In this document: positions 3,811 to 64,000 of the stretch, one piece after another
How positions within the stretch are numbered: position 1 is the first letter of the stretch
How the letters are laid out: every line of letters begins with the position of its first letter
IMG/VR virus record: IMGVR_UViG_3300012988_000016
Span: 186,001-250,000 of that record
Length of the DNA: 64,000 nucleotides
Strand: one strand, 5' to 3'
Translations under genes and position numbers: made by a program
The notes under the pieces: generated by a model
Database searches by the model: none
Seen by the model: the letters and a program-made list of their open reading frames with translations, nothing else
What the model was told of the DNA's origin: nothing

Positions 3811-4578
3811 TTAGGGTGTTACACCAATTCGTCGTTTGGCGCTATTGAACGCCTTCTGACTTTCTCTCACTCGAATTCGAAATTTTGCCTCCTCTTTTCG
3901 CTTATCTCGCGCAGCCATACCTGCACGGGCTTCAACGGACAATCTCCCTTCGTACAGAGTATCCCATTTAGACATCTGTGGTTTTTTCTCCGAGCCTACC
4001 CTAGTGTGATTTTCGCCAGGACGGTGACCGAAGCCACTACCGTTCCATACGGGATCAAATCTCTCTCTCAACACATCTTCTACTGCTTTTGCCATCCATT
4101 TCAAAGGAATAACCTTGAAGCTAAACTCAGACAGAGACCATATACCCTGAGACTTAGCTACTTCATCAATACTGCTATAGTGCTGACTGAGCCTCGCGGT
4201 TAAAGAATCCCCCTTCTTCCCAGAAGCACTCCCAATGTACAGAGGATATTGGTTGGTAGACACACCTTCATACAAGGGGAGCGACCCCGAATACTGTATC
4301 GCGTACACACCTTGATCTTCTAAGTGCTGGATTTCTGGAATTTTCAGAAATGAAATGGGAGGCATGCTGAAGAACGCCCTAATGAAATCACTTGGTTCGG
4401 GCTCCAACGACAGATAGATCTTCGAATAGTCCTTGTAATCCCCTAGCAAATCAGAGGGATGAACTTCAGAGTCGTCGAAATTAGTCAAGCTCATAAACTG
4501 CTCCAATGAATCGCCTTCTATGGGGGAAATAGGCTGAGGTTGAGAGTAGGTTGCCAATCTAGTACGTCTCGGCATCAC
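3811..4578 (-). CDS. Eco29kI-like GIY-YIG endonuclease
   Basis: GVYAIQYSG...PLYIGSA, RLSQH, EDVLRERFDPVWN.SGFG and SKWDTLYEGR match the Eco29kI family pattern. Confidence 0.75.
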   Translation of the reverse strand: MMPRRTRLATYSQPQPISPIEGDSLEQFMSLTNFDDSEVHPSDLLGDYKDYSKIYLSLEPEPSDFIRAFFSMPPISFLKIPEIQHLEDQGVYAIQYSGSLPLYEGVSTNQYPLYIGSASGKKGDSLTARLSQHYSSIDEVAKSQGIWSLSEFSFKVIPLKWMAKAVEDVLRERFDPVWNGSGFGHRPGENHTRVGSEKKPQMSKWDTLYEGRLSVEARAGMAARDKRKEEAKFRIRVRESQKAFNSAKRRIGVTP

Positions 4579-5182
4579 CAGTTCTCCACCGATCGAGAAT
4601 CGGACGAGCTTGGAGGAAAGCCAGCGAACGTGCTCGAAGGTTAGCCAGATCCCCGTTGTTGTGAATCAGGTAATCTGCATGAGCGATTGCTCGGCCGGGG
4701 TTCTGAGAGGCGATCCGAATCTTAGCCTCTTCTTCGGTCAGACTACTTCGAGCCATCAGGCGTTGGAGTTGAAGGTCAAAGTCAATATCAACCACCACCA
4801 ACGGTCGAAGCGACACCCAATAATTGGACTCCACCAATTGGCTTGCTTCGTAGCAGATCAGCCCATCCAGCTTCAACGATTTCTCGATGAAACGGCTGTG
4901 AATGTGCTCCCATTGGATACGTTCCAACCTTTTGAGCAGCGTATCCCTGAATCTGAAGACGAGCCTCCCGAGTTTCTTCCGATCGATCTGGCGATCTTCA
5001 GTCAAGAAGTCCTCACCAAATGTGCGAACGATCTCATCGTAACAGTCCTCCCCAGGCCTCATCACTTCTCTGGAGAGCTGGTCGGCATCAATCACATGTA
5101 CGCCCGCCTCAGCAAAGAATCGGGCGACTGTGCTCTTACCCGAGGCGATTCCGCCTGTCAGTCCAAACACATCTCTAATCAT
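4559..5182 (-). CDS. coaE: Dephospho-CoA kinase
   Basis: FGLTGGIASGKSTVARFF...VIDADQLSREV, IDRKKLGRLVF and ADYLIHNNG. Confidence 0.93.
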   Translation of the reverse strand: MIRDVFGLTGGIASGKSTVARFFAEAGVHVIDADQLSREVMRPGEDCYDEIVRTFGEDFLTEDRQIDRKKLGRLVFRFRDTLLKRLERIQWEHIHSRFIEKSLKLDGLICYEASQLVESNYWVSLRPLVVVDIDFDLQLQRLMARSSLTEEEAKIRIASQNPGRAIAHADYLIHNNGDLANLRARSLAFLQARPILDRWRTGDAETY

Positions 5183-5598
5183 AGAAGTCCTTTGAAGACG
5201 GTCTCTTCCTCAGCCGTCAGCTCGACATCAAAGAATCCCAACTGACCTTTGAGGGGCCGGAAGGGCAACGCAGTGATCGATTCCAGCTTGTAGCCGTACT
5301 GCTCTTTCATGTGCCATACCCCACCGTCCTCTGCCCCTCTTGGATAGATGTGGGTGATGACCGCTGCCCCTAGGATTCCGCCCATACGGTACACATGTGA
5401 GCTCAGCTTAGGCATCGTAATCCCACACCAACTTTCGGCGAAGGCTAGGTCAGCCTTTGTGAAGGTGCCGGCTGAATGGATCAGGAAGGGAAGCGGGAGT
5501 TCGAGCTTCGTCTTCCACTTGCGGTTCTCGATGCGCTTCGGGCCGTCAACAACAAGCCAAGCCCAGGGTTGTCTGAGGCTGAGAGCCTTGACGATCAT
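5179..5598 (-). CDS. ASCH domain protein
   Basis: ALSLRQPWAWLVVDGPKRIENRKW and PLKGQLGFFDV; start moved to ATG 5598, 9 nt downstream of a GGTGTA motif. Confidence 0.85.
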   Translation of the reverse strand: MIVKALSLRQPWAWLVVDGPKRIENRKWKTKLELPLPFLIHSAGTFTKADLAFAESWCGITMPKLSSHVYRMGGILGAAVITHIYPRGAEDGGVWHMKEQYGYKLESITALPFRPLKGQLGFFDVELTAEEETVFKGLL

Positions 5599-5607
5599 TT
5601 GGGACAA

Positions 5608-5623
5608 TACACCGCCTGGTGTA
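5608..5623. promoter_or_regulatory. Back-to-back GGTGTA motif pair (putative divergent promoter)
   Basis: TACACC-GCCT-GGTGTA; an ATG lies 9 nt away on each side (5598 minus, 5633 plus). Confidence 0.65.
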
Positions 5624-5632
5624 CAACAATCC

Positions 5633-5851
5633 ATGGAACCCACCGAAAAGCTCTATGTGGTGCGCTTGTTCGACATGTTCGATGGCTGGATCGACATCTC
5701 AAAGCCGTTGTCTGAAGCTGAAGCAAAGACGATTTGGAACGAGAGGACTAAGAACGGTACTTGCAAGACCCAATACGCAGATGGGGACTATTACAAGATC
5801 TTCCCCGCCGACACCAAAATGCTCATCACCCCTGAGACGACTGGCCGCTAA
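5633..5851 (+). CDS. Hypothetical protein
   Basis: MEPTEKLYVVRLFDMFDGWIDIS...; start 9 nt after GGTGTA. Confidence 0.6.
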   Translation: MEPTEKLYVVRLFDMFDGWIDISKPLSEAEAKTIWNERTKNGTCKTQYADGDYYKIFPADTKMLITPETTGR

Positions 5852-5869
5852 TGGTGTATAGTGGGCGTC

Positions 5870-8065: not shown

Positions 8066-8127
8066 ACTCCAGTGTACACCAGGCTAGACGGCCGGGAAAG
8101 GAAATTCCTTATCGTTTTCCGTCTAGT

Positions 8128-8532: not shown

Positions 8533-8775
8533 CATCAGGACGGGAATTTAGATAATGGGTCGGATGAGGTTGACCCGACAGGGTGTGAGAGATCTGGGCG
8601 GCAATGACCGTCGCCCGCCTAGAAAGCACCGTTTTGGGCCACTCAAACAATGCCCGCATCGGAACTTCCGACCCTGTTGTTACCCTAGAAACTGTCTACA
8701 TTGGGAATGCCCAGATTGCAACCTAGGTTTGGATCTGGCCCACAATCCCCCAATGTGATGGTGTAGGACTGTCCT

Positions 8776-10029: not shown

Positions 10030-10045
10030 TGGTGTAGAAGTCAGG

Positions 10046-11507: not shown

Positions 11508-11525
11508 TCTGGTGTATTGCGTGGG

Positions 11526-11789
11526 ATGCCACACCCCACCACTCTTGATGGCCTGACTCCCAAGCAATTGGCTCAGGCCATTGGTCATTTCAGGTATGAC
11601 ACTCTGAAAGAGTTCCTCGATGAACTGGCAATCGCGTTAAATGATGAAGTGGCTGAGGGCGCTATTCTGGGGGAGGACGAATTGACCCGGGTTAAAACAT
11701 TGGCCATAGGTAACTTGAGTCTAGCTTCAAATCTCTTCGAAATAGCTTGGATCATGGTCAGACCGAATTCAGAATCCTCATCGGTGTAA
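11526..11789 (+). CDS. Hypothetical protein, paralog A of tandem pair
   Basis: GLTPKQLAQAIGHFRYDTLKEFL; GGTGTA 9 nt upstream. Confidence 0.7.
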   Translation: MPHPTTLDGLTPKQLAQAIGHFRYDTLKEFLDELAIALNDEVAEGAILGEDELTRVKTLAIGNLSLASNLFEIAWIMVRPNSESSSV

Positions 11790-11797: not shown

Positions 11798-12061
11798 ATG
11801 CACCCCTTACATATTGCGGGCCTTACCCCTGTCGAGTTGGCCCAGCAAGTGGCCAATTTACGTTATGACGCCTTGAAGGACTTCCTACAAGCACTCGCGG
11901 GTGAGTTGGGGGCTCAATCGATAGCTGATGGGGAACGGGGGCGGCCCAAACTGGCGAAAGCTTGTGGGATGGCCTCTCATAGCTTGGAAATGACCACCAT
12001 GCTGATCGAAACGGCTTGGCAAATCTCCGAGCCATTTATGCGGGATGAGCCTTCGGTGTAG
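11798..12061 (+). CDS. Hypothetical protein, paralog B of tandem pair
   Basis: GLTPVELAQQVANLRYDALKDFL; GGTGTA 9 nt upstream. Confidence 0.7.
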   Translation: MHPLHIAGLTPVELAQQVANLRYDALKDFLQALAGELGAQSIADGERGRPKLAKACGMASHSLEMTTMLIETAWQISEPFMRDEPSV

Positions 12062-14031: not shown

Positions 14032-14625
14032 ATGATCCCCACCGAAGACCAACCCTGCAAAGATTGCCAACGAAACACCACCGATCGAGATTACCGAATT
14101 CAGACATTTACGGCAAATGGGGAATATCTGTACACCCTCTGCCAAATGTGTTCTAGAAATCGTAAAGACGAAGAATATGCCCGAACAGGCGTCATTACGA
14201 CCAGTTTGTGGATGGATCGCCACCTAGATCATCTGAGCGTCTCTCGTAAGAAGCCGTTGGAGGATCCCCTCTTGCTGGCAATGGAAGGGTTGCAGCAGTT
14301 GACCCGAAAGTTCGAGGCCGAGGTCTGGTTCAATGGGTTGCAAAAGATCATTCTAGACTGTGACAGTGGGGGGATGGAGCTCAAGTCGGGCGATCTGCAG
14401 ATCCTCACGCTCTGCACTGGCGGCCGTGTACTGATGACGTTGTCCAACCCAGCGAAAGATTCGATCAGCCTCATCACGACGGATGAAGATGACGCCAGAC
14501 CAAAGATGGGCATCCAGGGCATCTGCGCCACTGCTGAGGTGGCGACAGGTTTGATCGAGCAAGCCATCACTGCTTGGCAGGCGGGTGCCAGGCCAGAAGC
14601 CTCCAGAGAAGTGTATCTGGTGTAG
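14032..14625 (+). CDS. Hypothetical protein with N-terminal CxxC...CxxC
   Basis: CKDC...CQMC putative Zn ribbon. Confidence 0.55.
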   Translation: MIPTEDQPCKDCQRNTTDRDYRIQTFTANGEYLYTLCQMCSRNRKDEEYARTGVITTSLWMDRHLDHLSVSRKKPLEDPLLLAMEGLQQLTRKFEAEVWFNGLQKIILDCDSGGMELKSGDLQILTLCTGGRVLMTLSNPAKDSISLITTDEDDARPKMGIQGICATAEVATGLIEQAITAWQAGARPEASREVYLV

Positions 14626-15882: not shown

Positions 15883-15948
15883 TGGGGGTTAAGTTGTCGA
15901 TTTTCTGTGCCGTCTAAGTAAGCAACACAACACGGTGTACAGAATCCA

Positions 15949-19397: not shown

Positions 19398-19443
19398 TGG
19401 TGGAGGATACACCAAAAATTCTTTTGCAAACTCTCAGATGGTC

Positions 19444-19449
19444 GGTGTA
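19444..19449 (+). promoter_or_regulatory. GGTGTA motif upstream of tracrRNA (putative promoter)
   Basis: Same motif as upstream of more than 30 genes; 12 nt before the anti-repeat; TTGCAA at 19424-19429. Confidence 0.55.
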
Positions 19450-19458
19450 TAGGAACAT

Positions 19459-19560
19459 CACGATCTAAAGGGGTCGCTAACCAGGTCCCCAGCTACCACC
19501 AAATATGCAAAGCTGGGCAAAGGGCCCCTAGGACCAACATCCTAGGGGCCTTTATTTTTC
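19459..19560 (+). ncRNA. tracrRNA
   Basis: 19462-19481 GATCTAAAGGGGTCGCTAAC pairs with repeat nt 1-19 (one U bulge, one G-U, one U-U mismatch); followed by CCCAGCT/AGCTGGG stem and GGCCCCTAGG/CCTAGGGGCC hairpin with T-rich tail; ends approximate. Confidence 0.85.
19521..19560 (+). terminator. Intrinsic terminator-like hairpin at tracrRNA 3' end
   Basis: AGGGCCCCTAGG-ACCAACAT-CCTAGGGGCCTT followed by TATTTTTC. Confidence 0.7.
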
Positions 19561-19572: not shown

Positions 19573-22500
19573 ATGACACTTACATTGGGTCTAGATATCG
19601 GTACCAACTCGATTGGGCACGCACTTGTTGAGACGGATGAACAGGGGAACGTCATCTCCCTGAAACACATTGGAGTCCGAATCTTCAGTGACAGTCGAAC
19701 CGATAAAGAGAAGAAGCCTCTCAACGAGGCCAGGCGAACGGCTAGACAAGCGAGACGACAACGCGAACGCAAGAAGTCGAGGATGAAAGCCGTCTTGCGA
19801 GTATTGCGAGAACACGGGCTAGACCCTCAAGATTCCCTTCTGGAGAGCCCTTACGCAGCCAGGGCCGCCGCCCTCACAGGGCCGCTCAGCAGGTCTCAGG
19901 TAGGGAGGGCTATCTGGCATATTGCCAAACACAGAGGCCCTCGACTGGTGCGAAAAGATGACAAGGAGCAAGGTGTCATCAAAGAAGGCATCCGCAGTCT
20001 CGAAACCGAGATGCTGGCACAGAAGGCTCGGACCTATGGTGAACTTCTTGAAAGAATCCGGCTGAATGGTGGGTCTGTACGTCTCCGAGCTAACAGTGAG
20101 GGCTCATACAATCGTTACCCGTCCAGACAGGTGATGGAGGCTGAGTTCAACCATCTGTGGGAATCTCAAGTACCGCACCATCCAGAGGTTATGACCGAGG
20201 CTCTTAGAGAGCGCCTCATAACGGCCATCTTCTATCAGCGTCCTTTGAAGCCAGTCTATCCAGGGCGATGTACGCTGGAACCAGATGAATATCGGATGCC
20301 AAAGGCGATGCCAATGGCCCATGAGTTCAGGATCCGATCGGAGGTGGCCAATCTGACCCTCAAACAGGGAGATGAGGTCCGAACCCTAACGGCCAATGAG
20401 CGTCAAATCGTAGTTGATGGTTTGTTGAACTCAGAGAAGCTGACCTTTACCGCTATCGCCAAACTGCTGGGATTTCGTGCCGGCGTGAAGTTCAATCTCG
20501 AAGGAGATGACGGTGATGGGGGCAAGGCCAGGAATTACTTGATCGGAGATCTGACTTCCAGCAAGATTCGTAGTGTGTGGCCCAATTTCTCTAAAATGCC
20601 GGAGAACATGAGACTTAGCTTGATCCTAGCATTGCTTGACATTGACGATGAGCTAGAACTCAAATGTAAGCTTCGATCCGATTTTGGGATTTCACCAGAG
20701 GTGGTGGATCAGTTGTCTAGTTTGATGCTGCCAGCCGGATACATCAATCTCAGCCAAAAAGCTGTGAGGGCCGTCTTGCCTTATCTTCAACAAGGTATGG
20801 GCTACGCACAAGCCTGTGCAGCTGCTGGATACCATCATTCCGATCATCGTCCAGAGGAATTGACCCCAATCCTACCCTTCTACAACGAACTCCCAGGAAT
20901 GAAGCGTTATCTGGGGCAGGAACAAAAGGGTAAACCTGGAAGGATCTCTAATCCAACAGTCCATGTGGCTTTGAATCAGGTTCGCAAGGTTTACAATACG
21001 TTGGTTGAGGTCTTTGGGGTGCCTGATTGTGTCAATATCGAGGTCACTCGTGAATTGAAACAGACGGCCAAGCAGAAGATCGCGGCCAATAAGCAGAATG
21101 CGGCCAACAAGAAGGTTCGTGACGCCTTCAAAGAGAAGTTCCCCGAGCGTGCCAACTCCGACCAAGACCTGGTACGTTGGAGGTTGTGGAATGAACTTCC
21201 AGAGGAGCGCAAGGTCTGTGTCTACTCTGGAAAAGAGATTACTCTTAACGACCTTTTCTCACCTAGGGTTGAAATTGACCACATTATCCCCCACTCGATC
21301 TCTTTCGACAACAGCCCGTCTAATCTGGTGCTTTGTGCTCAAGGGGCTAACCGTCTGAAGACCAATAAGACTCCTCATGAAGCCTTCGCCCCTGGCCTAC
21401 ACAAGGAGTTCAACTGGTCAGCCATTGAGCAACGAGTGTTTGAACTGGCAGCTGACAAATGCGGCACCTGGGCTAAAAAGAAGCTTCGCTTCAAGCCAGA
21501 TTATCTAGATGTAGGAGGGGATTTCGCCACCAGGCAATTGAACGACACGGCTTACTTGTCAAAAGTTGTCCGTATCTACCTAGGACACTCCTGTCCAAAG
21601 GTGTTAGCCGTACGGGGTGCCGTTACGGCCATCTGCCGCAAAGAATGGGGCCTCGACCGATTGTTACGAGACACAGTTTCCGATCATGCCGATCTGTTCT
21701 GCCTATCCTCGGTCAAGAGCACGGGGGTGTTTATGGCCCCTCATCATGTGACAGGAGGGTCGCACGACATTCGGGAAGATTGCTCGGTCAATAAGCTGCT
21801 CAAATTTGGAGCTGAAGTAGTACGTGTAGATCCTATCGGGAGGTTCCAAACGCCAGGTGAGATTCGCAGGATCGAGCCAAGAGGTCCAAAGGTTAACTTC
21901 CAAAATCTTAGAACCACAACTAGGAAGCCGTTGACTAGCCTTACGGCGAACAGTATCTCACAGATCAAAGATGATGGGTTGAGAACCAAAATCACAGCCC
22001 ATATCAAAGAGGTCAATCCCAAGCTCCTTACCGACACTCTGAATCGAGAGGCTAAGGTAGAATTGTCCAGGCTGTTGGGAGAGTTTGGCCAGAAGCACTC
22101 CGTTGGAAGGGTCCGGATTGTCGCCAACAAATCTGGAGTCATCGTTCGACACGGAGCCGCTAACCAACACACAAAGGTGTTGATAGCAGATACGAATCAT
22201 CATGGAGATGTGGTGGTAAGAGACGGTAAAGTGAAGATGCTCCTGACCACGTATGCAGAACTCAACCATCCACCAGAAGTGGAAGCTGGATGGACGCTAA
22301 AGATGCGACTGCACAAGGGCGACATGATTCGTGTGCCAGGATACGTCTACAACAAATACCCAAAGAAGCCGAATTATGGGAAGGACAGATCTGACCACCG
22401 GCATCATGCGGTGGATGCTTTCGTGATAGCTTGCATCACACCAAGTCTGTTGCGCAAGATCAGTCGTTCCATCGCCTTGTCCAAGTACAACCAGTTGCAC

Positions 22501-22635
22501 GAGTTCCCAGAGCCGTACGAGAGGTTCAAGCAAGAACTGAAGACACATTTGAGGAAACTCGTTGTGTCCAATAAATTGGACCATAGCATCAGCGCCCCCA
22601 TTTTCACCGAAACGAACTACGGCTTCACAGCCTGA
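19573..22635 (+). CDS. cas9: Type II-C Cas9, 1020 aa, with rearranged C-terminal domain order
   Basis: RuvC-I LGLDIGTNSIG (D8), Arg-rich bridge helix, REC, RuvC-II NIEVTRE (E490), HNH EIDHIIP...N (H570), RQLNDTAY, RuvC-III DHRHHAVDA (H945/D948); flanked by tracrRNA and array. Confidence 0.97.
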   Translation: MTLTLGLDIGTNSIGHALVETDEQGNVISLKHIGVRIFSDSRTDKEKKPLNEARRTARQARRQRERKKSRMKAVLRVLREHGLDPQDSLLESPYAARAAALTGPLSRSQVGRAIWHIAKHRGPRLVRKDDKEQGVIKEGIRSLETEMLAQKARTYGELLERIRLNGGSVRLRANSEGSYNRYPSRQVMEAEFNHLWESQVPHHPEVMTEALRERLITAIFYQRPLKPVYPGRCTLEPDEYRMPKAMPMAHEFRIRSEVANLTLKQGDEVRTLTANERQIVVDGLLNSEKLTFTAIAKLLGFRAGVKFNLEGDDGDGGKARNYLIGDLTSSKIRSVWPNFSKMPENMRLSLILALLDIDDELELKCKLRSDFGISPEVVDQLSSLMLPAGYINLSQKAVRAVLPYLQQGMGYAQACAAAGYHHSDHRPEELTPILPFYNELPGMKRYLGQEQKGKPGRISNPTVHVALNQVRKVYNTLVEVFGVPDCVNIEVTRELKQTAKQKIAANKQNAANKKVRDAFKEKFPERANSDQDLVRWRLWNELPEERKVCVYSGKEITLNDLFSPRVEIDHIIPHSISFDNSPSNLVLCAQGANRLKTNKTPHEAFAPGLHKEFNWSAIEQRVFELAADKCGTWAKKKLRFKPDYLDVGGDFATRQLNDTAYLSKVVRIYLGHSCPKVLAVRGAVTAICRKEWGLDRLLRDTVSDHADLFCLSSVKSTGVFMAPHHVTGGSHDIREDCSVNKLLKFGAEVVRVDPIGRFQTPGEIRRIEPRGPKVNFQNLRTTTRKPLTSLTANSISQIKDDGLRTKITAHIKEVNPKLLTDTLNREAKVELSRLLGEFGQKHSVGRVRIVANKSGVIVRHGAANQHTKVLIADTNHHGDVVVRDGKVKMLLTTYAELNHPPEVEAGWTLKMRLHKGDMIRVPGYVYNKYPKKPNYGKDRSDHRHHAVDAFVIACITPSLLRKISRSIALSKYNQLHEFPEPYERFKQELKTHLRKLVVSNKLDHSISAPIFTETNYGFTA

Positions 22636-22740: not shown

Positions 22741-23717
22741 GTTGTGACCCCTTTTGATCTCTCGATCCATTCTCCCGTCTTGGCCATCCCCAATCTCACC
22801 GCCGGATCCGCGTTGTGACCCCTTTTGATCTCTCGATCCATTCTCCCACCCAGGCAACCAGTTTGTCCGCGCACCCCTAGAATGTTGTGACCCCTTTTGA
22901 TCTCTCGATCCATTCTCCCAGTCAGGCCAATGTCTCATACTACCTAAAGAGAGCTGTTGTGACCCCTTTTGATCTCTCGATCCATTCTCCCGGTGAAAGG
23001 ATGATGTCAGAATGACTTGGTCAATGTGTTGTGACCCCTTTTGATCTCTCGATCCATTCTCCCAGCCAACAGCTTCGCTGCACAGATGCAGTTTGATGCG
23101 TTGTGACCCCTTTTGATCTCTCGATCCATTCTCCCCGAGCCAACTGACGTCAGCGAACCACGCCCCCTGGTAGTTGTGACCCCTTTTGATCTCTCGATCC
23201 ATTCTCCCTCGACGCCCGAGATCGTCACCAAGTACACGCACACGTTGTGACCCCTTTTGATCTCTCGATCCATTCTCCCTACGTGCCGAGACGCTGTTCG
23301 ACTGTTACAAGGAGGTTGTGACCCCTTTTGATCTTCCCGATCCATTCTCACTACGCTGCTCAAGTAAGAAGGCGTTTCCGATCTGTTATGACCCCCTTTA
23401 TCTTCTAACCCATTCCACCACCCCTCTTGGTGCTGGTGTCTCCGCGTGAAGTTGTGACCCCTTATCGTCTTGTCCTTTCACACCAACTCGTCGCCAACAC
23501 GAAGTTGTGACCCCCTTCTGATCTTCTGATCCTTTCTCACAACAAGAGAACCGTTACTCAACACGGAACATAAGGTTGTGACCCCTTTTAGATCCCTTCG
23601 AGACATTCTCCTCTATCGTAAACACCTCGGCGTTGTAACCCCTTTTGATCGTCTGATCCTTTCTCACGTTGTGAGATCAACTACAACGAGCTCGCCAAGT
23701 GTTGTGACCCCTTTTGA
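22741..23717 (+). CRISPR. CRISPR array: 36-nt repeat GTTGTGACCCCTTTTGATCTCTCGATCCATTCTCCC, 8 identical plus 7 degenerate copies
   Basis: Identical repeats start at 22741, 22812, 22884, 22956, 23028, 23100, 23173 and 23244; degenerate ones at 23315, 23385, 23451, 23504, 23575, 23632 and 23701; first 8 spacers 35-37 nt; orientation taken from tracr pairing and trailer decay. Confidence 0.97.
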
Positions 23718-23803
23718 GTACGTCGAGTGACCTGAAACGTCAACGATACGAAGGCCGAGCTCCTCAGGGGGTTCGGCCTTTGCCGTTTGGTGTATCGATC
23801 CCC

Positions 23804-27158: not shown

Positions 27159-27176
27159 TTGGTGTAATTAGGGGAG

Positions 27177-31004: not shown

Positions 31005-31228
31005 CAGATCTCCAGGTCCGCTGGGCGTTGTCGATACACCAACTGGCAGGATTCACAATGCCAGCCAAGGATGTGGTGCTGTTGTGGGGGCCCTCCATAT
31101 TTGGGACCTAGCGGGCCATGCCGGATCCCTATCGTGGCCACCACTTTTCCGCTACAGAGGCGGCACACGCCTGGTTTGGGGGCGTACTGGCCACGTAGGC
31201 GACGTCGGTCCTCCATATCGTTCTTCAT
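31004..31228 (-). CDS. Small Zn-ribbon protein
   Basis: CRLC...CESC. Confidence 0.55.
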   Translation of the reverse strand: MKNDMEDRRRLRGQYAPKPGVCRLCSGKVVATIGIRHGPLGPKYGGPPQQHHILGWHCESCQLVYRQRPADLEI

Positions 31229-32421: not shown

Positions 32422-32437
32422 TACACCGCTCGGTGTA
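32422..32437. promoter_or_regulatory. Back-to-back GGTGTA motif pair
   Basis: TACACC-GCTC-GGTGTA between divergent starts 32410 (minus) and 32448 (plus). Confidence 0.65.
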
Positions 32438-33880: not shown

Positions 33881-33900
33881 GCTTGACCCCTACACCGCCG

Positions 33901-37976: not shown

Positions 37977-38005
37977 GCTGATAGAACGGAAGCCGTTCCC
38001 AACAG

Positions 38006-39087: not shown

Positions 39088-39103
39088 TACACCAATCGGT
39101 GTA
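39088..39103. promoter_or_regulatory. Back-to-back GGTGTA motif pair
   Basis: TACACC-AATC-GGTGTA between divergent starts 39079 and 39114. Confidence 0.65.
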
Positions 39104-39835: not shown

Positions 39836-39996
39836 AATAGCCCATGAAAAAGCAAGAATTCAACATCAAGCCGCTGGTGGCGGCCGTGTTCAGGAAGATA
39901 GCCGCCAAGCTACCGGCTGGCCGGATCGTTGGGCCTAGAAAAAAGACTAGAGTCAAACGGGCTTAATCTTTGGTCCATGGATCCGTTCTAGCAGCC

Positions 39997-40356: not shown

Positions 40357-42241
40357 ACAAATTCAGCTACATGGAAAGCGTCAATGCCACCGGCACCAGT
40401 AGGTGGCATATCCGTCAGATCCCCAACGGTGAAAATCGAAAGCTAGGGGGAGGGATCACCACCCCCAGTCTCTGTGAACGAATCCAAAAGGGCTGGGATC
40501 TGAAAACAGAGGTCACCCAAGTCTTTGACCCATTCACCTGCAAAGAGTGTTTGGCTCAGTACCTTTCGCACACAGAAAAGCCATCTTCCACTTAACTCTT
40601 CCCACCCCCATCCGTTCTATCCTGCATGACCAACCTCACCCTGCACCCCCTCCTCAATCGTGCCGTCACCATCACCAAGGGCTGCGATGGTTTGCAGCTC
40701 CGCAAGAACCAAAAGGCCATCGTGATGGGCATCACCATGTTGGGTGCTGAGTACAGTCATCAGGTCAAAGTGACCCTCAATCTGGGCGGGCGTCAAACCA
40801 GCCTGTACGCTCGGCACATCAATCGTCTGTCCGACCCCACCTTCAACCTCAATAACGGCAATCCGCTCAAGCGGGTCACCATTCGGGCCTGATGGCACGG
40901 GCTAGAACTCTCCAACATCCAAAAGACTGGGTCTATGATCCAGTCTTTGACCTCCGTTGGCTCAAGCTAGTGTCCAACCTCTGGTTCCGTCGATTTCCGG
41001 TCAAGGTGATCCTCAAAGCAACCGGTGAAGAGGTTTGGATACTGGGCTGGCGTCGAGATTGGTTCGGGCCGACATTGCGGCTCAAGTTCTCCGACGGCTC
41101 AATCGGTCACGGATACGACCCTGCCACCATCCGACTCCCCCGACTCTCATGAAGCATTACAAGCAAATGTTGGCCGATAGAGACGCGGCCACCAAACGAG
41201 CCTTGGAAGCTCTTGAAACAACTCTTCAAGAGTGTCGAGCTATTTTGGACCAGACCCACCGGCAACTGGGACACCAACAATTGTTGGTAAACGATTGGTA
41301 TCCAGAACTGGGCTACGAATGGTGGCCAGCCATTAACCCCACGACCAATCGGCCGTAAGGAACAGGCATGCACCTAAATACCATGATCGAAGAAATGACC
41401 CAAGATCTCAAGGGTCTTCGTTTCGCCTTTCCGGTTCGATGCACTATCGATACCCCCAATCCAGAAGACGCTCTAGACGATACGGTTCTTCATGCGACCT
41501 TTCGGATGGGGGAACGGATCCTAGCTGGCCTGGAAGTCATCAAGCAGGATGCCATTCAGCCGATCGATGTTGAGAAGGGTGTGACCCTCAAGGTCGTATT
41601 CTACGGCACCTGTGAGACCGTGATCATCAGTGAGGCTCGCATCGCACATCATGTGGTGGGGTTGGTGCTGGAAGTGGCCGGCTTCTTCGAAGTAGCGGTT
41701 CACGGCCGAGTTTTCGAATCATGACCTTCGCCGAGTGGAAGACCGCCTGTATCCAGGAAGTCAGGGATCACGGCCTCAGCTTCGATGACTTGTGGGATGA
41801 CGATGACCCCTACGAGCTCTTTGAAGTGGCGGAACCGATGTTCAAGAACGGGGTTAGCCCTGCTGAGTTCATCGAAGAAGTGTTCGAGGAAGATCTGGCC
41901 CATCTGGCCGGCGTCGAACAAGAACAGGAAGATTCCTTGGAAGGGGAATTCGAATTTGAGGAGGAAGACTGATGCCTCTTTACGGTCAGTACGGCGGCAA
42001 GCTCAAGATCCTCAGAGTAGCGACGGTCGAGGATTTCAGACATCTCGAAGGGGTGGACCCGATCGAAAAGGATCGCCTAAATATCGAAGCCGGCCTATAC
42101 GTGGTGATCGAATTCGACGGAAGTGCTGGCAGGGAATGCATGTATCCGAAGTCTCAGATACGGATCAAAGGGGATCCGACTGAAGTGGATCAGACCCTTC
42201 AAGCATTGAAGCGGCCTGTTCAAGGGCAGCCGAGCATCTAG
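40326..42241 (+). other. Run of about 7 small overlapping hypothetical genes (40326, 40626, 40892, ~41149, 41388, 41721, 41972)
   Basis: Coupled stop/start overlaps on the plus strand, typical of phage accessory operons; no recognisable domains. Confidence 0.55.
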
Positions 42242-43054: not shown

Positions 43055-43071
43055 TTAGGTCAATACACCGT

Positions 43072-45566: not shown

Positions 45567-45774
45567 TTGGCTTTCTTGGCCCCCTCGGCCATCATCACCA
45601 AAGCGGCCTCTTCATACTGTTGACGCCGCTTTTCGGGCAGTTCTGGCCACCAATCGAAAGGATTGGGGCCGTCCGGTTGGACGTATTTGCCGTAGTTTAG
45701 TTCAATCCAGAGTTGGTGGCCAGGGGTCATGCTGACAATACACCAATCAAGAGGAGTTTTGTGGTGTATCTCCT

Positions 45775-47299: not shown

Positions 47300-47315
47300 T
47301 ACACCAGATGGTGTA
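47300..47315. promoter_or_regulatory. Back-to-back GGTGTA motif pair
   Basis: TACACC-AGAT-GGTGTA between divergent starts 47287 and 47327. Confidence 0.65.
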
Positions 47316-50468: not shown

Positions 50469-50497
50469 GCTGCTAGAACGGGTCGACCATCCAGGAA

Positions 50498-50932
50498 TTA
50501 AGCCGCGCCTTTGCGCTTGTTGCGGTTCCGTTCGGTCTTGCCGGTTCGCTTGGTCTCTTTCTGGCCGAACCCTGCCTGCTTGGTCTCCTTGACGATTCGT
50601 GCTTCGATATCTTCATCGTGACGAGCCGCCATATCGGAGGTGATCCATTCTTCGGCTTCCTCCAACAAGGTAGTCAGGATGGTGACGAACGGGGTCTCCA
50701 ACCCTACATGCACCATCGAGCTGCGGTCCTTGTGGGCACGGATGTGGGGAATGAACTTCTCTGGGCCGGGAGCCTGGCCGGTGCCTTGCTGCTTGACCAG
50801 ACGGCCGATTCGGAATGAGTATTGAAGCTCATTTCCGCGGGCGGGGGCAGTGCTGATCTCAACAGCGTAGCCGGTCACGGTATCTTTGCACGTATGAGTG
50901 AGGGTCCAAACGGTCTGATGATTGTTGGTCAT
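50498..50932 (-). CDS. Hypothetical protein
   Basis: 144 aa with basic tail. Confidence 0.6.
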   Translation of the reverse strand: MTNNHQTVWTLTHTCKDTVTGYAVEISTAPARGNELQYSFRIGRLVKQQGTGQAPGPEKFIPHIRAHKDRSSMVHVGLETPFVTILTTLLEEAEEWITSDMAARHDEDIEARIVKETKQAGFGQKETKRTGKTERNRNKRKGAA

Positions 50933-51013
50933 GTACTACCTAGCGGCCCAAATGGCGAAAGCTTTAGAGGCTGTCGGAAAAAATGACCATGGTCGGTGTA
51001 ATGGTACAACATC

Positions 51014-54120: not shown

Positions 54121-54159
54121 GATGATCAATACACCGAAATTTCGGTGTATTGATCATCA
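54120..54159. repeat. Perfect 40-bp palindrome containing two GGTGTA motifs
   Basis: TGATGATCAATACACCGAAA|TTTCGGTGTATTGATCATCA, checked base by base. Confidence 0.95.
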
Positions 54160-56138: not shown

Positions 56139-56148
56139 TGGGGGTCAA

Positions 56149-56163
56149 TACACCAGCGGTGTA
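56149..56163. promoter_or_regulatory. Back-to-back GGTGTA motif pair
   Basis: TACACC-AGC-GGTGTA between starts 56138 (minus) and 56173 (plus). Confidence 0.65.
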
Positions 56164-56172
56164 GAGACATGG

Positions 56173-58828: not shown

Positions 58829-59081
58829 GGTGGGTCCTACGGTACACCAAACCAGAAGGTTAAGGCCGGTGTATCGCACCCAGATGAAAATCATCGAATC
58901 ATCAACTGATCTAATGACATGGAAACCCTTCATCGGCCCTGGACCAGACGAACAAGTTGAAGCTGCTTGGCAGGAGGTTCAGTTGTGGATCCAGCAAGAG
59001 CAACCCTTCGGGTTCTTCCGCATGGTCGCCTTCATTCCACCGGAGGTGTAAACTCGTCCGACAAAACACCTACTAGACAAG

Positions 59082-62153: not shown

Positions 62154-62159
62154 GACAGG

Positions 62160-62648
62160 TCATACACCACCGAAAGGGACCTTGTGCGGGGGTTGCCAAT
62201 AGTTTGGCCAGTTCTCGATCAGTCGGGTAAGACAGTAATCCATGTGCTCAATCACACTAAGAGGTACTTGATGCACATTCCTAGCATGGCTGACCTCTAC
62301 CGGACATTCCAGCAACACCAACTCTGGAAAATGCCCAAAAGCCGACGCTATCTGAACGTAAGGCGCAAGATCGTACAACATCACATTGGTGTTATCGACC
62401 ACAACCGTCGATTCTCTAGACAATGGAGTGGTGGTCCGATAATAGTGCATGGGGGTGGACACCAGATTGACGAACTTGCGCAAACAAGCCCCATGAGCCA
62501 AACTCCGATCCTCTATTTCAAAGCTGTATCCACCTGGACCTTCATGCCAATGATCGGCACTGCAAATCGAAACGTCCCCCCAAGTGTTTCGCTTGATCCA
62601 AGTAGATTTCCCAGCGCCTGGTAGCCCAATCAAAATCACCACTCTCAT
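62160..62648 (-). CDS. P-loop kinase (AAA_33/polynucleotide-kinase-like)
   Basis: LIGLPGAGKSTW, CSADHW, VVDNTN and RNVHQVP. Confidence 0.85.
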   Translation of the reverse strand: MRVVILIGLPGAGKSTWIKRNTWGDVSICSADHWHEGPGGYSFEIEDRSLAHGACLRKFVNLVSTPMHYYRTTTPLSRESTVVVDNTNVMLYDLAPYVQIASAFGHFPELVLLECPVEVSHARNVHQVPLSVIEHMDYCLTRLIENWPNYWQPPHKVPFGGV

Positions 62649-62675
62649 GGTGAGGCATTACACCAAATCCTGGAC

Positions 62676-62975
62676 TCAAGGCTTCGGAAGTGGGTCTGCT
62701 TTGACGAACCAGCTGACACCCCAGCAAGAGTAGTGATCTCCCGAACAGGTGCAGTAGTAGGCCAGCGGGTCACCCGAACTATCTAGCGGCACAGGAGTGT
62801 TGTGGGCACCGAACGCACAGGTGTCAGCCGTCTGAGGGTCACACTTGAAAGTGCCGTAGTTGAAATCAGCCGCATCATGCAGATAGCAGGAGTCTGGGAC
62901 GGCTGGCTTCTGGTCAGGATCCTGACCTGAACATGAGGTTAGTACTAGGAACGCTAAAATGATGGTTTTACACAT
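62676..62975 (-). CDS. Small Cys-rich lipoprotein
   Basis: Lipobox LVLTSC; additional Cys residues. Confidence 0.6.
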   Translation of the reverse strand: MCKTIILAFLVLTSCSGQDPDQKPAVPDSCYLHDAADFNYGTFKCDPQTADTCAFGAHNTPVPLDSSGDPLAYYCTCSGDHYSCWGVSWFVKADPLPKP

Positions 62976-63031
62976 ACCATCTAGAACGGAGCAAGGAAAT
63001 GAAAGTTAAGGTCCCTGCTCCGTTCTCAACG

Positions 63032-63823
63032 TCAACTTTCCCAGGTGGGGGTCGACCAGGCTTCGGGCCACGAACGTGTGGCGGGGGATGCTTGGTTCTT
63101 ATCCTTGGTCAAACCTTGATCCCGCATCTTCGCAGCAACCAGGCGGTCGGCCTCCACATCTGAGCCGTTGTAGCGTGAGACCTGCTCCTTATTGGGGTTC
63201 TTCTGACCTTCCTTGAGGGTCAAAAAGCCGCATTCGATCGCTCTCTCAAGAGCAGCGATCTTCATAGGAGATCCGTTCCGTAGGATGACCTGTTCCTTCC
63301 CATCATAGTAGATCTCAGAGTCTTTCAAAAAGGTCAGCTGAGAGTGGGCGGCGGTTCCAGTTACCCAGGAATGAACAAATTCTCTGGCTACCAGATAAAT
63401 GGTATAGACGGCACTCTGGGTTCCCTCTGACCTCTTAATCTGGGTCCAATCGACATCACGTGGGTACATGAACCCCGCTTGAGAGGTACGATCTTCGGAC
63501 AACCATCTCCCCTGATATACCTCTCCGTACAGTTTTACCGTACCATGCAGCTTATAGTTTCCAGCATGAGTCCTGACCACCGTACCATCTGGCAGGGTTT
63601 CGGGGAGTTTGGTAGGTTGTTTACCGTAGAAGCCTGCACGACGGGCTCGGATGCGTCGACCCAAAGCCACTACGACTTCTGGATTCTCGGCCCTGGCTCC
63701 AGGCGCACATGCATACGAGATAGCGGCCAGATGTAGGTCTTGAACACCATAACTGGGGCAGTCGGCCCATCCAAGGATTTGACCATCAGCGTCTTGTTCA
63801 CCACAACATTCGCATTTAGACAT
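63032..63823 (-). CDS. Hypothetical protein
   Basis: Start moved to ATG 63823 (9 nt after GGTGTA 63833-63838, minus strand). Confidence 0.6.
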   Translation of the reverse strand: MSKCECCGEQDADGQILGWADCPSYGVQDLHLAAISYACAPGARAENPEVVVALGRRIRARRAGFYGKQPTKLPETLPDGTVVRTHAGNYKLHGTVKLYGEVYQGRWLSEDRTSQAGFMYPRDVDWTQIKRSEGTQSAVYTIYLVAREFVHSWVTGTAAHSQLTFLKDSEIYYDGKEQVILRNGSPMKIAALERAIECGFLTLKEGQKNPNKEQVSRYNGSDVEADRLVAAKMRDQGLTKDKNQASPATRSWPEAWSTPTWES

Positions 63824-64000
63824 GATGACTCCTACACCAATCAGTTGACCCAAGTACTGGCCAATATGGCGGTACAGCTCCTTGTTACAAATCTCGTCGA
63901 CATATAGAAAGGATGTCCAAAGTCGAATCGACCTTTACACCCACAATGTGGACATGTGTGCTCCACTATTGTCTCGGTGACCCTAATTGGTTCATGCTCG

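What the first reader, a model, noticed from the sequence alone, without database searches (positions are those of the whole stretch)
3820..63838. GGTGTA motif about 9-10 nt upstream of more than 30 start codons: candidate phage promoter for leaderless mRNAs
Seen, plus strand: 5618, 5853, 8760, 10031, 11511, 11783, 12055, 14619, 15934, 23789, 27161, 32432, 39098, 45763, 47310, 50995, 54144, 56158, 58868. Minus strand (TACACC): 3820, 5608, 8075, 19408, 30379, 32422, 33891, 39088, 43064, 45739, 47300, 54130, 56149, 58843, 62659, 63833. The gap to ATG/GTG is mostly 8-14 nt and most often 9-10, usually without a Shine-Dalgarno. Inference: the TA could be the -12/-11 of a -10 element with transcription starting at or near the start codon, read by a phage-encoded or alternative sigma factor/RNAP. 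It also corrects many ORF-track starts. An alternative is a non-SD translation-initiation signal, but its presence before the tracrRNA favours a promoter.
Basis: partly seen in the sequence, partly recalled or inferred. Interest (0 to 1): 0.7.

Follow-up and report, generated by a model that had tools for sequence, protein, structure and literature searches.

The report
Start-codon-adjacent promoter of huge phages
A short DNA word (Y-GGTGTA) sits 8-10 bases in front of about a hundred genes, and of the Cas9 guide-helper RNA (tracrRNA), in this roughly 309-kb soil phage and in at least 25 related giant phages; it is most likely a phage-clade-specific promoter that makes mRNAs starting at or next to the start codon.

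Summary
GGTGTA occurs 58 times in the window against 17.6 expected.

In the whole 308,895-bp phage contig, 98 of 200 copies lie 7-13 nt upstream of a start, with the peak at 9-10 nt. The extended consensus is Y-GGTGTA-nnG, and there is no -35-like element.

No transcript data exist, but the indirect evidence favours a promoter over a translation signal:
- One copy lies 12 nt before the tracrRNA anti-repeat, with no ORF behind it.
- There are sixteen back-to-back divergent pairs against one convergent pair.
- When the motif lies 18-60 nt from a start, a canonical SD tends to appear.
- Structural genes use ordinary SD leaders.
- A second, bipartite and clearly promoter-like motif also abuts ATGs.
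- Orthologues keep the motif while the flanking sequence diverges.

Across IMG/VR, 25 related huge-phage records give 904 GGTGTA-N9-10-ATG hits against 75 for the control pattern. Thirteen sister-clade records give 38 against 37.

What reads the motif is unknown. No RNA polymerase gene was found in the contig or in three relatives. Sigma-like genes occur in relatives but not in this incomplete contig. I rate this a new variant of a known kind (T4 late promoters, Thermus-phage leaderless promoters).

The parts
3820..3825 (-). class-1 motif, 10 nt before ATG 3809 (95-aa ORF)
5608..5623 (.). back-to-back pair with a 4-nt gap: minus-strand copy 9 nt before ATG 5598 (139 aa), plus-strand copy 9 nt before ATG 5633 (72 aa)
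5853..5858 (+). class-1 motif directly after the upstream stop codon, 11 nt before ATG 5870 (221 aa)
8075..8080 (-). class-1 motif, 9 nt before ATG 8065 (111 aa)
8760..8765 (+). class-1 motif, 10 nt before GTG 8776 (417 aa, PcfJ-like)
10031..10036 (+). class-1 motif one base after the TGA of the preceding gene, 9 nt before ATG 10046
11511..11516 (+). class-1 motif, 9 nt before ATG 11526 (87 aa)
11783..11788 (+). class-1 motif whose TA is part of the upstream TAA stop; 9 nt before ATG 11798
12055..12060 (+). class-1 motif overlapping the upstream TAG stop; 8 nt before ATG 12069 (193 aa, 5'-nucleotidase NT5C)
14619..14624 (+). class-1 motif overlapping the upstream TAG stop; 9 nt before GTG 14634 (161 aa)
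15934..15939 (+). class-1 motif, 9 nt before ATG 15949 (282 aa)
19408..19413 (-). class-1 motif, 10 nt before GTG 19397 (DNA methylase, 330 aa); divergent partner of the tracrRNA promoter, 30 nt away
19443..19452 (+). full-consensus copy (C-GGTGTA-taG) with no ORF behind it: candidate promoter of the tracrRNA, 12 nt before the anti-repeat
19459..19560 (+). tracrRNA candidate: anti-repeat 19462-19482, an internal hairpin, and a 14-bp GC-rich terminator stem 19520-19553 followed by a T-run
   Evidence: fold -43 kcal/mol, z -4.3
19573..22635 (+). cas9 (HNH_4, RuvC_III, Cas9_a). It has no motif of its own; AGGA lies 8 nt before the ATG. Probably expressed by read-through from 19443
22741..23356 (+). 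CRISPR array of nine 36-nt repeats, followed by degenerate repeats up to 23717
23789..23794 (+). class-1 motif, 9 nt before ATG 23804 (205 aa)
27161..27166 (+). class-1 motif two bases after the upstream TGA, 10 nt before ATG 27177 (451 aa)
30379..30384 (-). class-1 motif, 9 nt before ATG 30369 (257 aa)
31035..31040 (-). full-consensus copy 30 nt before ATG 31004, with GGAG 6 nt before that ATG: candidate leadered transcript from the same promoter type
32422..32437 (.). back-to-back pair with a 4-nt gap: starts at ATG 32410 (minus) and ATG 32448 (plus)
33891..33896 (-). class-1 motif, 10 nt before ATG 33880 (103 aa)
39088..39103 (.). back-to-back pair with a 4-nt gap: starts at ATG 39079 (minus) and ATG 39114 (plus)
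43064..43069 (-). class-1 motif, 9 nt before GTG 43054 (196 aa)
45739..45768 (.). divergent pair with an 18-nt gap: starts at ATG 45730 (minus) and ATG 45778 (plus)
47300..47315 (.). back-to-back pair with a 4-nt gap: starts at ATG 47287 (minus, 12 nt) and ATG 47327 (plus, 11 nt)
50995..51000 (+). class-1 motif, 13 nt before ATG 51014 (96 aa)
54130..54149 (.). divergent pair with an 8-nt gap: starts at ATG 54120 (minus) and ATG 54162 (plus)
56149..56163 (.). back-to-back pair with a 3-nt gap: starts at ATG 56138 (minus, metallo-beta-lactamase fold, 324 aa) and ATG 56173 (plus)
58843..58873 (.). divergent pair with a 19-nt gap: starts at ATG 58828 (minus, 14 nt) and ATG 58884 (plus, 10 nt)
62659..62664 (-). 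class-1 motif, 10 nt before ATG 62648 (162 aa)
63833..63838 (-). class-1 motif, 9 nt before ATG 63823 (263 aa)
39963..39990 (+). class-2 bipartite promoter (TTAAyTT, about 11 nt, CCGTTCTA), 6 nt before ATG 39997: a separate signal that shows the same leaderless layout
40592..40619 (+). class-2 promoter, 6 nt before ATG 40626
37982..38009 (-). class-2 promoter, 5 nt before ATG 37976
50474..50501 (-). class-2 promoter, 5 nt before ATG 50468
62982..63009 (-). class-2 promoter, 6 nt before ATG 62975

Best explanation
Y-GGTGTA-nnG is the core, and apparently the only, recognition element of a promoter class specific to one clade of huge phages. It lies in the -10 region and has no -35 partner. I infer that transcription starts about 9-10 nt downstream of the motif's last A. 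On most of the roughly 100 genes that carry it, the mRNA would then begin at the A or G of the start codon, or within a few nt of it, and be translated without a Shine-Dalgarno sequence.

The same element also appears to drive a non-coding RNA (the tracrRNA, and probably the whole tracrRNA-cas9-array unit by read-through) and a few leadered mRNAs that carry an ordinary SD. It serves non-structural genes, namely enzymes of DNA and nucleotide metabolism, a methylase and the Cas9 locus. The structural module (contig 1-100 kb) uses SD-led mRNAs instead.

No RNA polymerase gene is present, and the motif is conserved across relatives whose sampled loci have 44-65% GC. The most likely reader is therefore the host RNA polymerase redirected by a conserved phage-encoded specificity factor, sigma-like or sigma-remodelling, as in T4 late transcription.

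Shown: the enrichment, position, consensus, the tracrRNA context, conservation and clade distribution.
For: 1. Positional enrichment. 98 of 200 copies lie 7-13 nt before a start, with a sharp peak at 9-10 nt. 121 of 200 copies lie in the 17% of the contig that is non-coding.

2. Non-coding target. A full-consensus copy at window 19443-19452 is followed, with no ORF, by the anti-repeat (19462-19482, complementary to the CRISPR repeat), a hairpin and a strong intrinsic terminator (19520-19553 plus a T-run). This is a tidy RNA gene of about 100 nt whose only upstream signal is the motif.

3. Divergent pairs. Sixteen TACACC-Nx-GGTGTA pairs lie within 40 nt, seven of them with exactly 4 nt between the copies; only one pair is convergent. 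This leaves only about 34-36 nt between the two start codons, too little for two promoters with leaders. 24 of 72 motif genes (33%) have a divergent upstream neighbour, against 16% of SD genes and 11% of genes with neither signal.

4. SD appears with distance. A 5-mer SD is present at 4 of 91 starts when the motif is 7-13 nt away, and at 5 of 16 starts when it is 18-60 nt away (Fisher p = 0.0035). Structural genes carry ordinary AGGAG-type SDs 7-9 nt from the ATG, so the host ribosome uses the canonical anti-SD.

5. A second promoter class with the same layout. A bipartite motif (cTTAAyTTc, about 11 nt, tCCGTTCTA) has sigma-70-family architecture and lies 5-6 nt before the ATG at 23 sites. One further site has a 17-nt leader containing TAGGAG. 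Leaderless design is therefore general in this phage.

6. Nothing conserved upstream. The logo is flat from -45 to -2 relative to the motif. Sigma-70-type promoter matches are fewer than in shuffles: 8 against 11.6, and 6 against 13.2.

7. Phylogenetic footprint. In two relatives with about 67% amino-acid identity, 8 of 12 orthologues of motif genes keep the motif by an automatic test, and about 11 of 12 by eye, while the flanks are unalignable. None of 53 orthologues of non-motif genes has it. Where one orthologue has the motif 27 nt upstream, an AGAGGA lies before the ATG.

8. Clade distribution. GGTGTA-N9-10-ATG gives 904 hits against 75 for the reversed-pattern control in 25 huge-phage records. 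These include complete 398-529-kb genomes, and the 20-kb loci sampled from these records have 44-65% GC. Thirteen sister-clade records give 38 against 37.

9. Candidate readers. Relatives encode sigma-70-family-like proteins. No RNA polymerase was detected in the contig or in three relatives.
Against: - No transcript 5' ends are available; no RNA run was listed. The start sites are inferred.
- The element does not look like a canonical -10. There is no T where -7 would be, the spacer is not AT-rich (about 44% A+T, counted), and TG is not in the extended -10 register.
- Spacing varies from 8 to 14 nt, so some transcripts would carry 1-5 nt leaders.
- GGTG is part of the sequence complementary to the 16S 3' tail, so some ribosome contact cannot be excluded.
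- No sigma or RNA polymerase gene lies in this contig. The contig is estimated to be only 65% complete.
- Copies inside genes are about as frequent as chance predicts, so there is no sign of selection against spurious promoters.
- The CRISPR leader itself has no motif.
- A test on 42 tRNA genes of a complete relative was uninformative: only one tRNA has the motif close upstream.
Confidence: 0.75

Rival explanations
1. The motif lies inside the mRNA and is a non-SD translation-initiation signal. It would pair with rRNA or bind a ribosomal or phage protein about 10 nt upstream of the start codon, with transcription starting further upstream.
For: - The position 8-13 nt before starts is roughly where ribosome-binding sites lie.
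- GGTG is complementary to CACC in the 16S 3' tail (established knowledge).
- Motif genes lack an SD.
- Cluster K mycobacteriophage start-associated sequences are a precedent that was interpreted this way (PMC3203893).
- A universal rRNA target could explain conservation across phages with different GC content.
Against: - The motif precedes a non-coding RNA, with the anti-repeat beginning 12 nt downstream.
- Only 4 nt could pair with the anti-SD, yet T5, A6, the preceding Y and the G at +3 are as conserved as GGTG.
- The GGTG core is 10-12 nt from the start, too far for that part of the anti-SD.
- When the motif is 25-35 nt upstream, an ordinary SD appears next to the ATG.
- Divergent pairs with a 4-nt gap would need promoters buried inside the opposite gene, and nothing is conserved there.
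- The sister clade does not use the motif.
Confidence: 0.08
2. The motif is the binding site, or half-site, of a phage DNA-binding regulator (repressor or activator) that overlaps promoters of another kind. It would not itself be the element that positions RNA polymerase.
For: - Seven copies form perfect inverted repeats with a 4-nt gap, which look like dimer operators.
- The motif is short and nearly invariant (72 exact copies against 9 one-mismatch copies at starts).
- Relatives encode helix-turn-helix proteins with tandem sigma region-4 domains.
Against: - Most sites are single and asymmetric, with a fixed orientation and distance to the start.
- No other conserved promoter element accompanies them.
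- Sigma-70-type matches are depleted.
- The inverted repeats all sit exactly between divergent starts, as two back-to-back promoters would.
Confidence: 0.08
3. The motif is an RNA processing site. A sequence-specific endoribonuclease would cut long transcripts next to it and create leaderless or short-leader mRNAs and the tracrRNA 5' end.
For: - It is strand-specific and at a fixed distance from starts.
- It often lies directly behind the stop codon of the upstream gene in same-strand runs.
- It would also explain the tracrRNA case.
Against: - A third of motif genes have no same-strand gene upstream.
- Divergent pairs would require pervasive antisense transcription across the neighbouring gene's start.
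- Leadered cases keep 25-35 nt with an SD after the motif, which a cut about 10 nt downstream of the motif would not need.
- No candidate nuclease was identified.
Confidence: 0.05

Closest known systems
T4-type late promoters (a single -10-region element, TATAAATA, read by host RNA polymerase with the phage sigma gp55; conserved across T4-like phages). From my own knowledge, not re-tested here.
   Same: - One short, nearly invariant element near -10 with no -35 element.
- Dozens of copies per genome.
- Conserved across a phage clade whatever the host.
- No phage RNA polymerase needed.
   Different: - The sequence is G-rich and unrelated to TATAAATA.
- It serves non-structural rather than structural genes.
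- Transcripts appear to be leaderless.
- No gp55-like gene was identified.
Thermus phage promoters giving leaderless transcripts: phiYS40 and Lalka27a (late -10 element TAGGGT; most transcripts begin at the A or G of the start codon; bioRxiv 10.64898/2026.04.20.719267), and the P23-45 extended -10 middle and late promoters (PMC7403470).
   Same: - Phage-specific -10-type elements abutting start codons.
- Leaderless mRNAs as the main mode of expression.
- Host RNA polymerase thought to be re-specified by a phage factor.
   Different: - Those elements keep the TAnnnT skeleton 6 nt from the start site. Here there is no T at the equivalent position, and the conserved block lies 9-10 nt from the start.
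- The hosts there (Deinococcus-Thermus) are themselves rich in leaderless mRNAs (PMC12340547, abstract listed). The host here is unknown.
- Those cases have mapped start sites; this one has none.
Late promoters of the giant phage AR9, read by its non-virion RNA polymerase: AACA-(6N)-T-A/G, with the last base as the start site (PMC5312081).
   Same: A very short motif at about -11 to -8, in about 100 copies in a giant phage, with no -35 element.
   Different: - AR9 uses its own multisubunit RNA polymerase. None was detected here or in three relatives.
- AR9 5' UTRs are 26-491 nt long, not leaderless.
Start-associated sequences (SAS) of Cluster K mycobacteriophages: the 13-bp GGGATAGGAGCCC, 3-7 bp before starts (PMC3203893).
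   Same: - An oriented repeat immediately upstream of many start codons.
- Restricted to the non-structural part of the genome.
- A bias towards ATG starts.
- The upstream stop codon often lies inside the repeat.
- Conserved across a phage cluster.
- Function not tested.
   Different: - SAS contains the SD core AGGAG and sits where a ribosome-binding site sits. This motif has no SD core and lies further upstream.
- This motif also precedes a non-coding RNA and forms back-to-back divergent pairs.

Membership tests
Shine-Dalgarno / ribosome-binding site | Complementarity to the 3' tail of 16S rRNA across the conserved positions | tested here: not met
   Only GGTG can pair with CACC. T5, A6, the preceding Y and the G at +3 are equally conserved and unpaired. 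The host's 16S is unknown, but other genes of the phage use AGGAG-type SDs.
Shine-Dalgarno / ribosome-binding site | Found only in front of translated ORFs, at about 5-9 nt, and degenerate in sequence | tested here: not met
   It precedes the tracrRNA. The motif ends 8-10 nt before the start. Exact copies outnumber one-mismatch copies 72 to 9.
Canonical sigma-70 (-35/-10) promoter | A TTGACA-like -35 element 16-18 nt upstream of the -10 element | tested here: not met
   The logo is flat from -45 to -2 relative to the motif.
Canonical sigma-70 (-35/-10) promoter | A TAnnnT -10 hexamer with T at -7 | tested here: not met
   TA is present, but four bases later there is no T preference (A13, C13, G6, T10 at 9-nt spacing). 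G is preferred one base earlier.
-10-only phage promoter read by a phage sigma (T4 late type) | A single short invariant element in the -10 region, many copies, no -35 element | tested here: met
-10-only phage promoter read by a phage sigma (T4 late type) | A phage-encoded sigma-like specificity factor | tested here: inconclusive
   None was found in this contig. Relatives encode a tandem sigma region-4 protein (Sigma70_r4, 53.9 bits), weak full-length sigma-like proteins of 258-274 aa, and in one genome a clear ECF sigma. No link to the motif was shown.
Leaderless mRNA | The transcript 5' end coincides with the start codon | not testable with these tools
   No RNA run was listed for this sequence.
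Leaderless mRNA | No SD, and a purine-initial start codon (ATG or GTG) | tested here: met
   A 5-mer SD occurs at 4 of 91 sites. In the spacing table of the 98 linked sites, all but about three start with ATG or GTG. Of the 72 motif genes in my gene calls, 65 start with ATG, 6 with GTG and 1 with TTG.
Giant-phage (phiKZ/AR9) non-virion RNA polymerase promoters | A phage-encoded multisubunit RNA polymerase | tested here: not met
   No match to Rpb1_2 or Rpb2_6 and no DFDGD motif in the contig; no Rpb1_2 match in three relatives, one of them a 485-kb record. No T7-like RNA polymerase either, but that search had no positive control.
Cluster K start-associated sequences | A 13-bp consensus containing AGGAG, 3-7 bp before starts | tested here: not met
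   Different sequence, no SD core, and 8-10 nt spacing.

The most novel reading that the evidence does not exclude
The motif is read by a so-far undescribed kind of promoter-specificity factor conserved in a large clade of 400-530-kb phages. Candidates are the tandem sigma region-4 protein, or the very divergent sigma-like protein of about 260-290 aa seen in relatives. Such a factor would let host RNA polymerase open a G-rich, non-TATAAT -10 element with no -35 contact and switch some 50-100 genes per genome to leaderless expression.
Probability: 0.25. Interest if true: 0.8.

Novelty: new variant of a known kind. Interest (0 to 1): 0.62.

Why it matters
If the motif is a promoter, a 7-9-nt word is enough to mark transcription units and true start codons in a whole clade of uncultivated giant phages: at least 25 IMG/VR records and about 900 sites. 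Here it changes 19 of 38 ORF starts in one window.

It would mean that leaderless translation is a major expression mode of huge phages living outside the phyla where leaderless mRNAs are known to be common. It would also mean that a phage Cas9 system (tracrRNA, and probably cas9 and the array) is wired into the phage's own middle-gene programme.

The G-rich element with no -35 partner does not fit the known recognition rules of sigma-70, and no reader has been identified. This gives a concrete handle for finding a new specificity factor, and a compact, portable promoter and leaderless-expression part.

Tried and rejected
- RNA evidence: no RNA run was listed for window 54000-57200. The only holders listed are four soil DNA metagenomes.
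- Rfam at the gathering threshold found nothing in the window.
- Searches of the contig for sigma and RNA polymerase families all found nothing: Sigma70_r2, Sigma70_r4_2, TIGR02937, T7-type RNA_pol (no positive control), Rpb1_2, Rpb2_6, a DFDGD regular expression and a crude sigma region-2 regular expression.
- Pfam and PHROGs on seven large unknown proteins gave no transcription function.
- Host identification through the CRISPR repeat failed. A 19-mer gave six single hits in 596 Gb of genomes, about what chance predicts (my estimate is about four), and no arrays.
- Close relatives of Cas9 and of the methyltransferase-helicase were sought in IMG/VR; none was found.
- LR745208.1, the best phage hit for the methyltransferase-helicase, shows only weak motif use (8 against 2, and 13 against 5). 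By its tandem region-4 protein it groups with the sister clade that lacks the motif.
- The 20-kb neighbourhoods of the tandem region-4 gene in 80 loci are barely enriched (39 of 461 copies linked to a start, against 37 of 754 for the control). The motif is regional within genomes, so whole records had to be scanned.
- The class-2 motif is not used across the clade.
- Upstream regions of 42 tRNA genes in a complete relative were uninformative: one tRNA has the motif 7 nt upstream.
- The sigma-like genes of relatives are not themselves preceded by the motif.
- The literature library holds no paper that links GGTGTA to phage transcription.
- I did not run structure prediction or complex prediction, because no candidate protein in this contig justified it.

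Full report
WHAT THE WINDOW IS

The window is bases 186001-250000 of a single 308,895-bp contig with 52.8% GC. IMG/VR classes it as a linear virus record, about 65% complete. The only public runs listed that hold it are soil metagenomes.

The contig encodes:
- tail and baseplate proteins (Baseplate_J, neck and tail PHROGs), a UvrD helicase and a family A DNA polymerase;
- in the window, a type II CRISPR-Cas locus. cas9 lies at 19573-22635 (HNH_4, RuvC_III, Cas9_a). An array of nine 36-nt repeats lies at 22741-23356, followed by degenerate repeats up to 23717.

CHECK OF THE OBSERVATION

GGTGTA occurs 58 times in the window against 17.6 +/- 4.0 in shuffles. Each is followed after 8-14 nt by ATG or GTG opening an ORF. 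One more good site (62163, minus strand) was missed.

Genome-wide, 82 of 200 copies (41%) lie 7-13 nt before a start opening an ORF of at least 60 aa. Permuted hexamers give a median of 7% and a maximum of 16%. With ORFs of at least 50 aa there are 98 linked sites, at spacings 8:11, 9:42, 10:26, 11:7, 12:5 and 13:7.

The logo extends the motif to Y-GGTGTA-nnG. The preceding base is C or T in 95 of 98 sites, and G at +3 occurs in 62 of 98. Nothing is conserved from -45 to -2, so there is no -35-like element. Exact copies at starts outnumber one-mismatch copies 72 to 9. 121 of 200 copies lie in the 17% of the contig that is non-coding.

The motif is almost absent from contig 1-100 kb: 3 of 77 genes there, against about a quarter of the genes elsewhere. 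That region holds the structural genes, and its intergenic regions show ordinary AGGAG-type SDs 7-9 nt before the ATG.

PROMOTER OR TRANSLATION SIGNAL?

No RNA run was listed, so the argument is indirect. Several independent lines point the same way.

(a) The tracrRNA. A full-consensus copy (C-GGTGTA-taG, 19443-19452) has no ORF behind it. Twelve nt downstream begins a 21-nt stretch complementary to the 5' part of the CRISPR repeat (19462-19482). This is followed by a hairpin and a 14-bp GC-rich terminator stem with a T-run (19520-19560). The 104-nt stretch folds at -43 kcal/mol, z = -4.3. A start about 10 nt after the motif would place the 5' end 2-3 nt before the anti-repeat. A random copy landing there with the full consensus is very unlikely; I estimate about 1 in 1,000 or less from the background density.

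(b) Divergent pairs. Sixteen TACACC-Nx-GGTGTA pairs lie within 40 nt, seven with exactly 4 nt between them, against one convergent pair. The two start codons are then only about 34-36 nt apart. If the motif lay inside the mRNAs, each promoter would have to sit inside the opposite gene, where nothing is conserved. A third of motif genes (24 of 72) have a divergent upstream neighbour, against 16% and 11% of other genes. The median gap is 60 nt, against 143-276 nt.

(c) SD appears with distance. A 5-mer SD is present at 4 of 91 starts when the motif is 7-13 nt away, but at 5 of 16 when it is 18-60 nt away (p = 0.0035). Examples are AAGGAG or AAGGA 5-8 nt before the ATG with the motif 33 nt upstream. 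In one orthologue pair the motif moved from 8 to 27 nt, and AGAGGA lies before the ATG in that relative.

(d) A second motif class makes the layout explicit. cTTAAyTTc, about 11 nt, tCCGTTCTA, then 5-6 nt and ATG occurs at 23 sites, five of them in the window. One further site has a 17-nt leader containing TAGGAG. This bipartite arrangement has the geometry of sigma-70-family promoters. From my own knowledge, it resembles sigma-28 (TAAA-N15-GCCGATAA) and ECF (AAC-N16-CGT) consensus sequences. It can hardly be anything but a promoter placed so that transcription starts at the ATG.

(e) Canonical sigma-70-type matches are depleted relative to shuffles (8 against 11.6; 6 against 13.2; 1 against 4.2). 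The two motif classes are the dominant conserved words of the intergenic DNA.

(f) Pairing with rRNA cannot explain the conservation. Only GGTG matches the anti-SD region, while TA, the preceding Y and the G at +3 are equally fixed. GGTG also lies 10-12 nt from the start.

CONSERVATION

Two IMG/VR contigs from another metagenome (G001, 155 kb; G002, 83 kb) were found through the class-2 promoter pattern. They share 76 proteins with this phage at a median of 67% identity.
- They carry GGTGTA-N9-10-ATG 18 and 7 times, against 0 and 0 for the reversed control.
- Y precedes the motif in 33 of 36 sites.
- Of 12 orthologues of motif genes, 8 keep the motif by an automatic test and about 11 by eye, while the surrounding upstream sequence is unalignable. 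None of 53 orthologues of non-motif genes has it.

G001 and LR745208.1 encode a protein of about 200-290 aa with tandem sigma-70 region-4 domains. I used it as a marker and retrieved 106 IMG/VR loci, mostly on contigs of 100-620 kb.

Scanning whole records gave a clean split. My sums over the table are:
- The 25 records whose marker is 57-83% identical to G001's give 904 matches to GGTGTA-N9-10-ATG against 75 for the control. Examples are 78 v 5, 72 v 4, 65 v 2 and 60 v 0. They include complete genomes of 398-529 kb, most with terminal repeats.
- The 13 records with a marker 34-44% identical give 38 against 37.

The sampled 20-kb loci of the positive records range from 44 to 65% GC.

In the complete 398-kb genome G012 the spacing again peaks at 10 and 9 nt, and Y precedes the motif in 46 of 56 sites.

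The class-2 motif, by contrast, is not used outside the lineage of G000, G001 and G002. It would fit lineage- or host-specific promoters, perhaps early ones.

WHO READS THE MOTIF?

No T7-type or multisubunit RNA polymerase was detected in the contig or in three relatives, so host RNA polymerase is the likely enzyme. The motif is conserved across a phage clade of varied GC content, whose members probably infect different hosts, and it is absent from the sister clade. This argues for a phage-encoded specificity factor rather than a host sigma. That step is inference.

The contig itself has no detectable sigma domain and no homologue of the relatives' sigma-like proteins. It is incomplete. Complete relatives carry:
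- the tandem region-4 protein;
- a fast-evolving protein of 258-274 aa that matches the ECF sigma model weakly over nearly its full length;
- in one genome, a clear ECF sigma.

None of these genes is preceded by the motif, and none is tied to it by evidence.

REGISTER

But 9 nt is the commoner spacing, no T occupies -7, the conserved G at +3 would sit at -8 or -7, and the spacer is about 44% A+T. The element therefore does not follow sigma-70 -10 rules, and the register remains open.

WHAT THE MOTIF GENES ARE

They include a PcfJ-like protein, a DNA methylase, a 5'-nucleotidase, a metallo-beta-lactamase-fold protein, an SNF2 helicase, AAA and ClpX-like ATPases, RNase HII, a transglycosylase and a VWA protein. 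These are non-structural functions, typical of middle genes. Class-2 promoters drive small unknown proteins and an RNA ligase.

cas9 has no motif of its own. AGGA lies 8 nt before its ATG, directly behind the tracrRNA terminator, and the array leader also lacks the motif. The simplest reading is one promoter at 19443 with partial termination after the tracrRNA. This is inference.

COMPARISON WITH KNOWN SYSTEMS

- T4 late promoters work most like this: a -10-only element, a phage sigma, conserved across the clade (my own knowledge).
- Thermus phages have mapped leaderless transcripts and phage-specific -10 elements. Their middle and late promoters are of the extended -10 class.
- AR9 late promoters are equally short, but need a phage RNA polymerase and give long leaders. 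phiKZ showed no leaderless transcripts.
- Cluster K start-associated sequences share the genomic behaviour, but contain the SD core.

The present motif differs from all of these in sequence and in lacking the TAnnnT skeleton. No paper in the library links it to phage transcription.

VERDICT

The promoter and leaderless-mRNA reading is supported by indirect evidence, with confidence 0.75. The reader of the motif and the exact start sites are unknown. It is a new variant of a known kind, of moderate to high interest because of its clade-wide scale and its unusual sequence.

Noticed in passing
window 37982-38009(-), 39963-39990(+), 40592-40619(+), 50474-50501(-), 62982-63009(-); 23 sites in the contig: A second, bipartite promoter-like motif (cTTAAyTTc, about 11 nt, tCCGTTCTA) lies 5-6 nt before ATGs of small unknown proteins and an RNA ligase. 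It is shared with relatives G001 and G002 but is not used in the wider clade.
   Followed up: partly
window 19443-23717: A complete type II CRISPR-Cas9 unit in a phage: tracrRNA, cas9, nine regular repeats, then about six degenerate repeats (23448-23717). cas9 and the array have no promoter motif of their own, which suggests read-through from the tracrRNA promoter. The spacer targets were not examined.
   Followed up: partly
window 11783-11789, 12055-12061, 14619-14625: The TA of the motif doubles as the first two bases of the upstream gene's stop codon (TAA or TAG). At 10031 and 27161 the motif starts 1-2 nt after a TGA. Signals are packed extremely tightly.
   Followed up: no
window 8529-8556(+) and 45255-45283(+): Two near-consensus sigma-70-type promoters (TTGACA-16-GATAAT, 11 of 12 matches; TTGACT-17-TATGAT, 10 of 12) stand out against an overall depletion of such sites. 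They may be host-read promoters.
   Followed up: no
L068:1174-1827(-) (G001), L064:1186-1788(-) and L065:1180-2043(+) (LR745208.1); 106 IMG/VR loci: A protein family of about 200-290 aa with two tandem sigma-70 region-4 helix-turn-helix domains and no recognisable region 2. It is widespread in huge phages on contigs of 100-620 kb. Its subfamily boundary coincides with use or non-use of the GGTGTA motif.
   Followed up: partly
G012:C1:326528-326935(-) and G027:C1:424016-424342(-): The matches to the sigma-like family in two complete relatives contain in-frame stops: two TAG in G012 and one TGA in G027. This may be a frameshift, a broken gene or stop-codon recoding. I did not look into it.
   Followed up: no
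G012 355-388 kb (loci L181-L183): This complete 398-kb relative has 42 tRNA genes, 39 of them in one 33-kb minus-strand region. That region holds 25 GGTGTA copies on the tRNA strand and 2 on the other. One copy lies 7 nt before tRNA-Tyr.
   Followed up: partly
window 33901-37575(-): A 1224-aa fusion of a DUF6094 methyltransferase with a ResIII / Helicase_C helicase. It is 45% identical to a protein of the 485-kb phage LR745208.1.
   Followed up: no
contig 303361-303434 and 304334-304404 (L016/L017): Two tRNA calls lie near the contig end: Leu-TAA and an odd 'Tyr' with anticodon ATA. The second contains a GGTGTA inside the gene, probably by chance.
   Followed up: no
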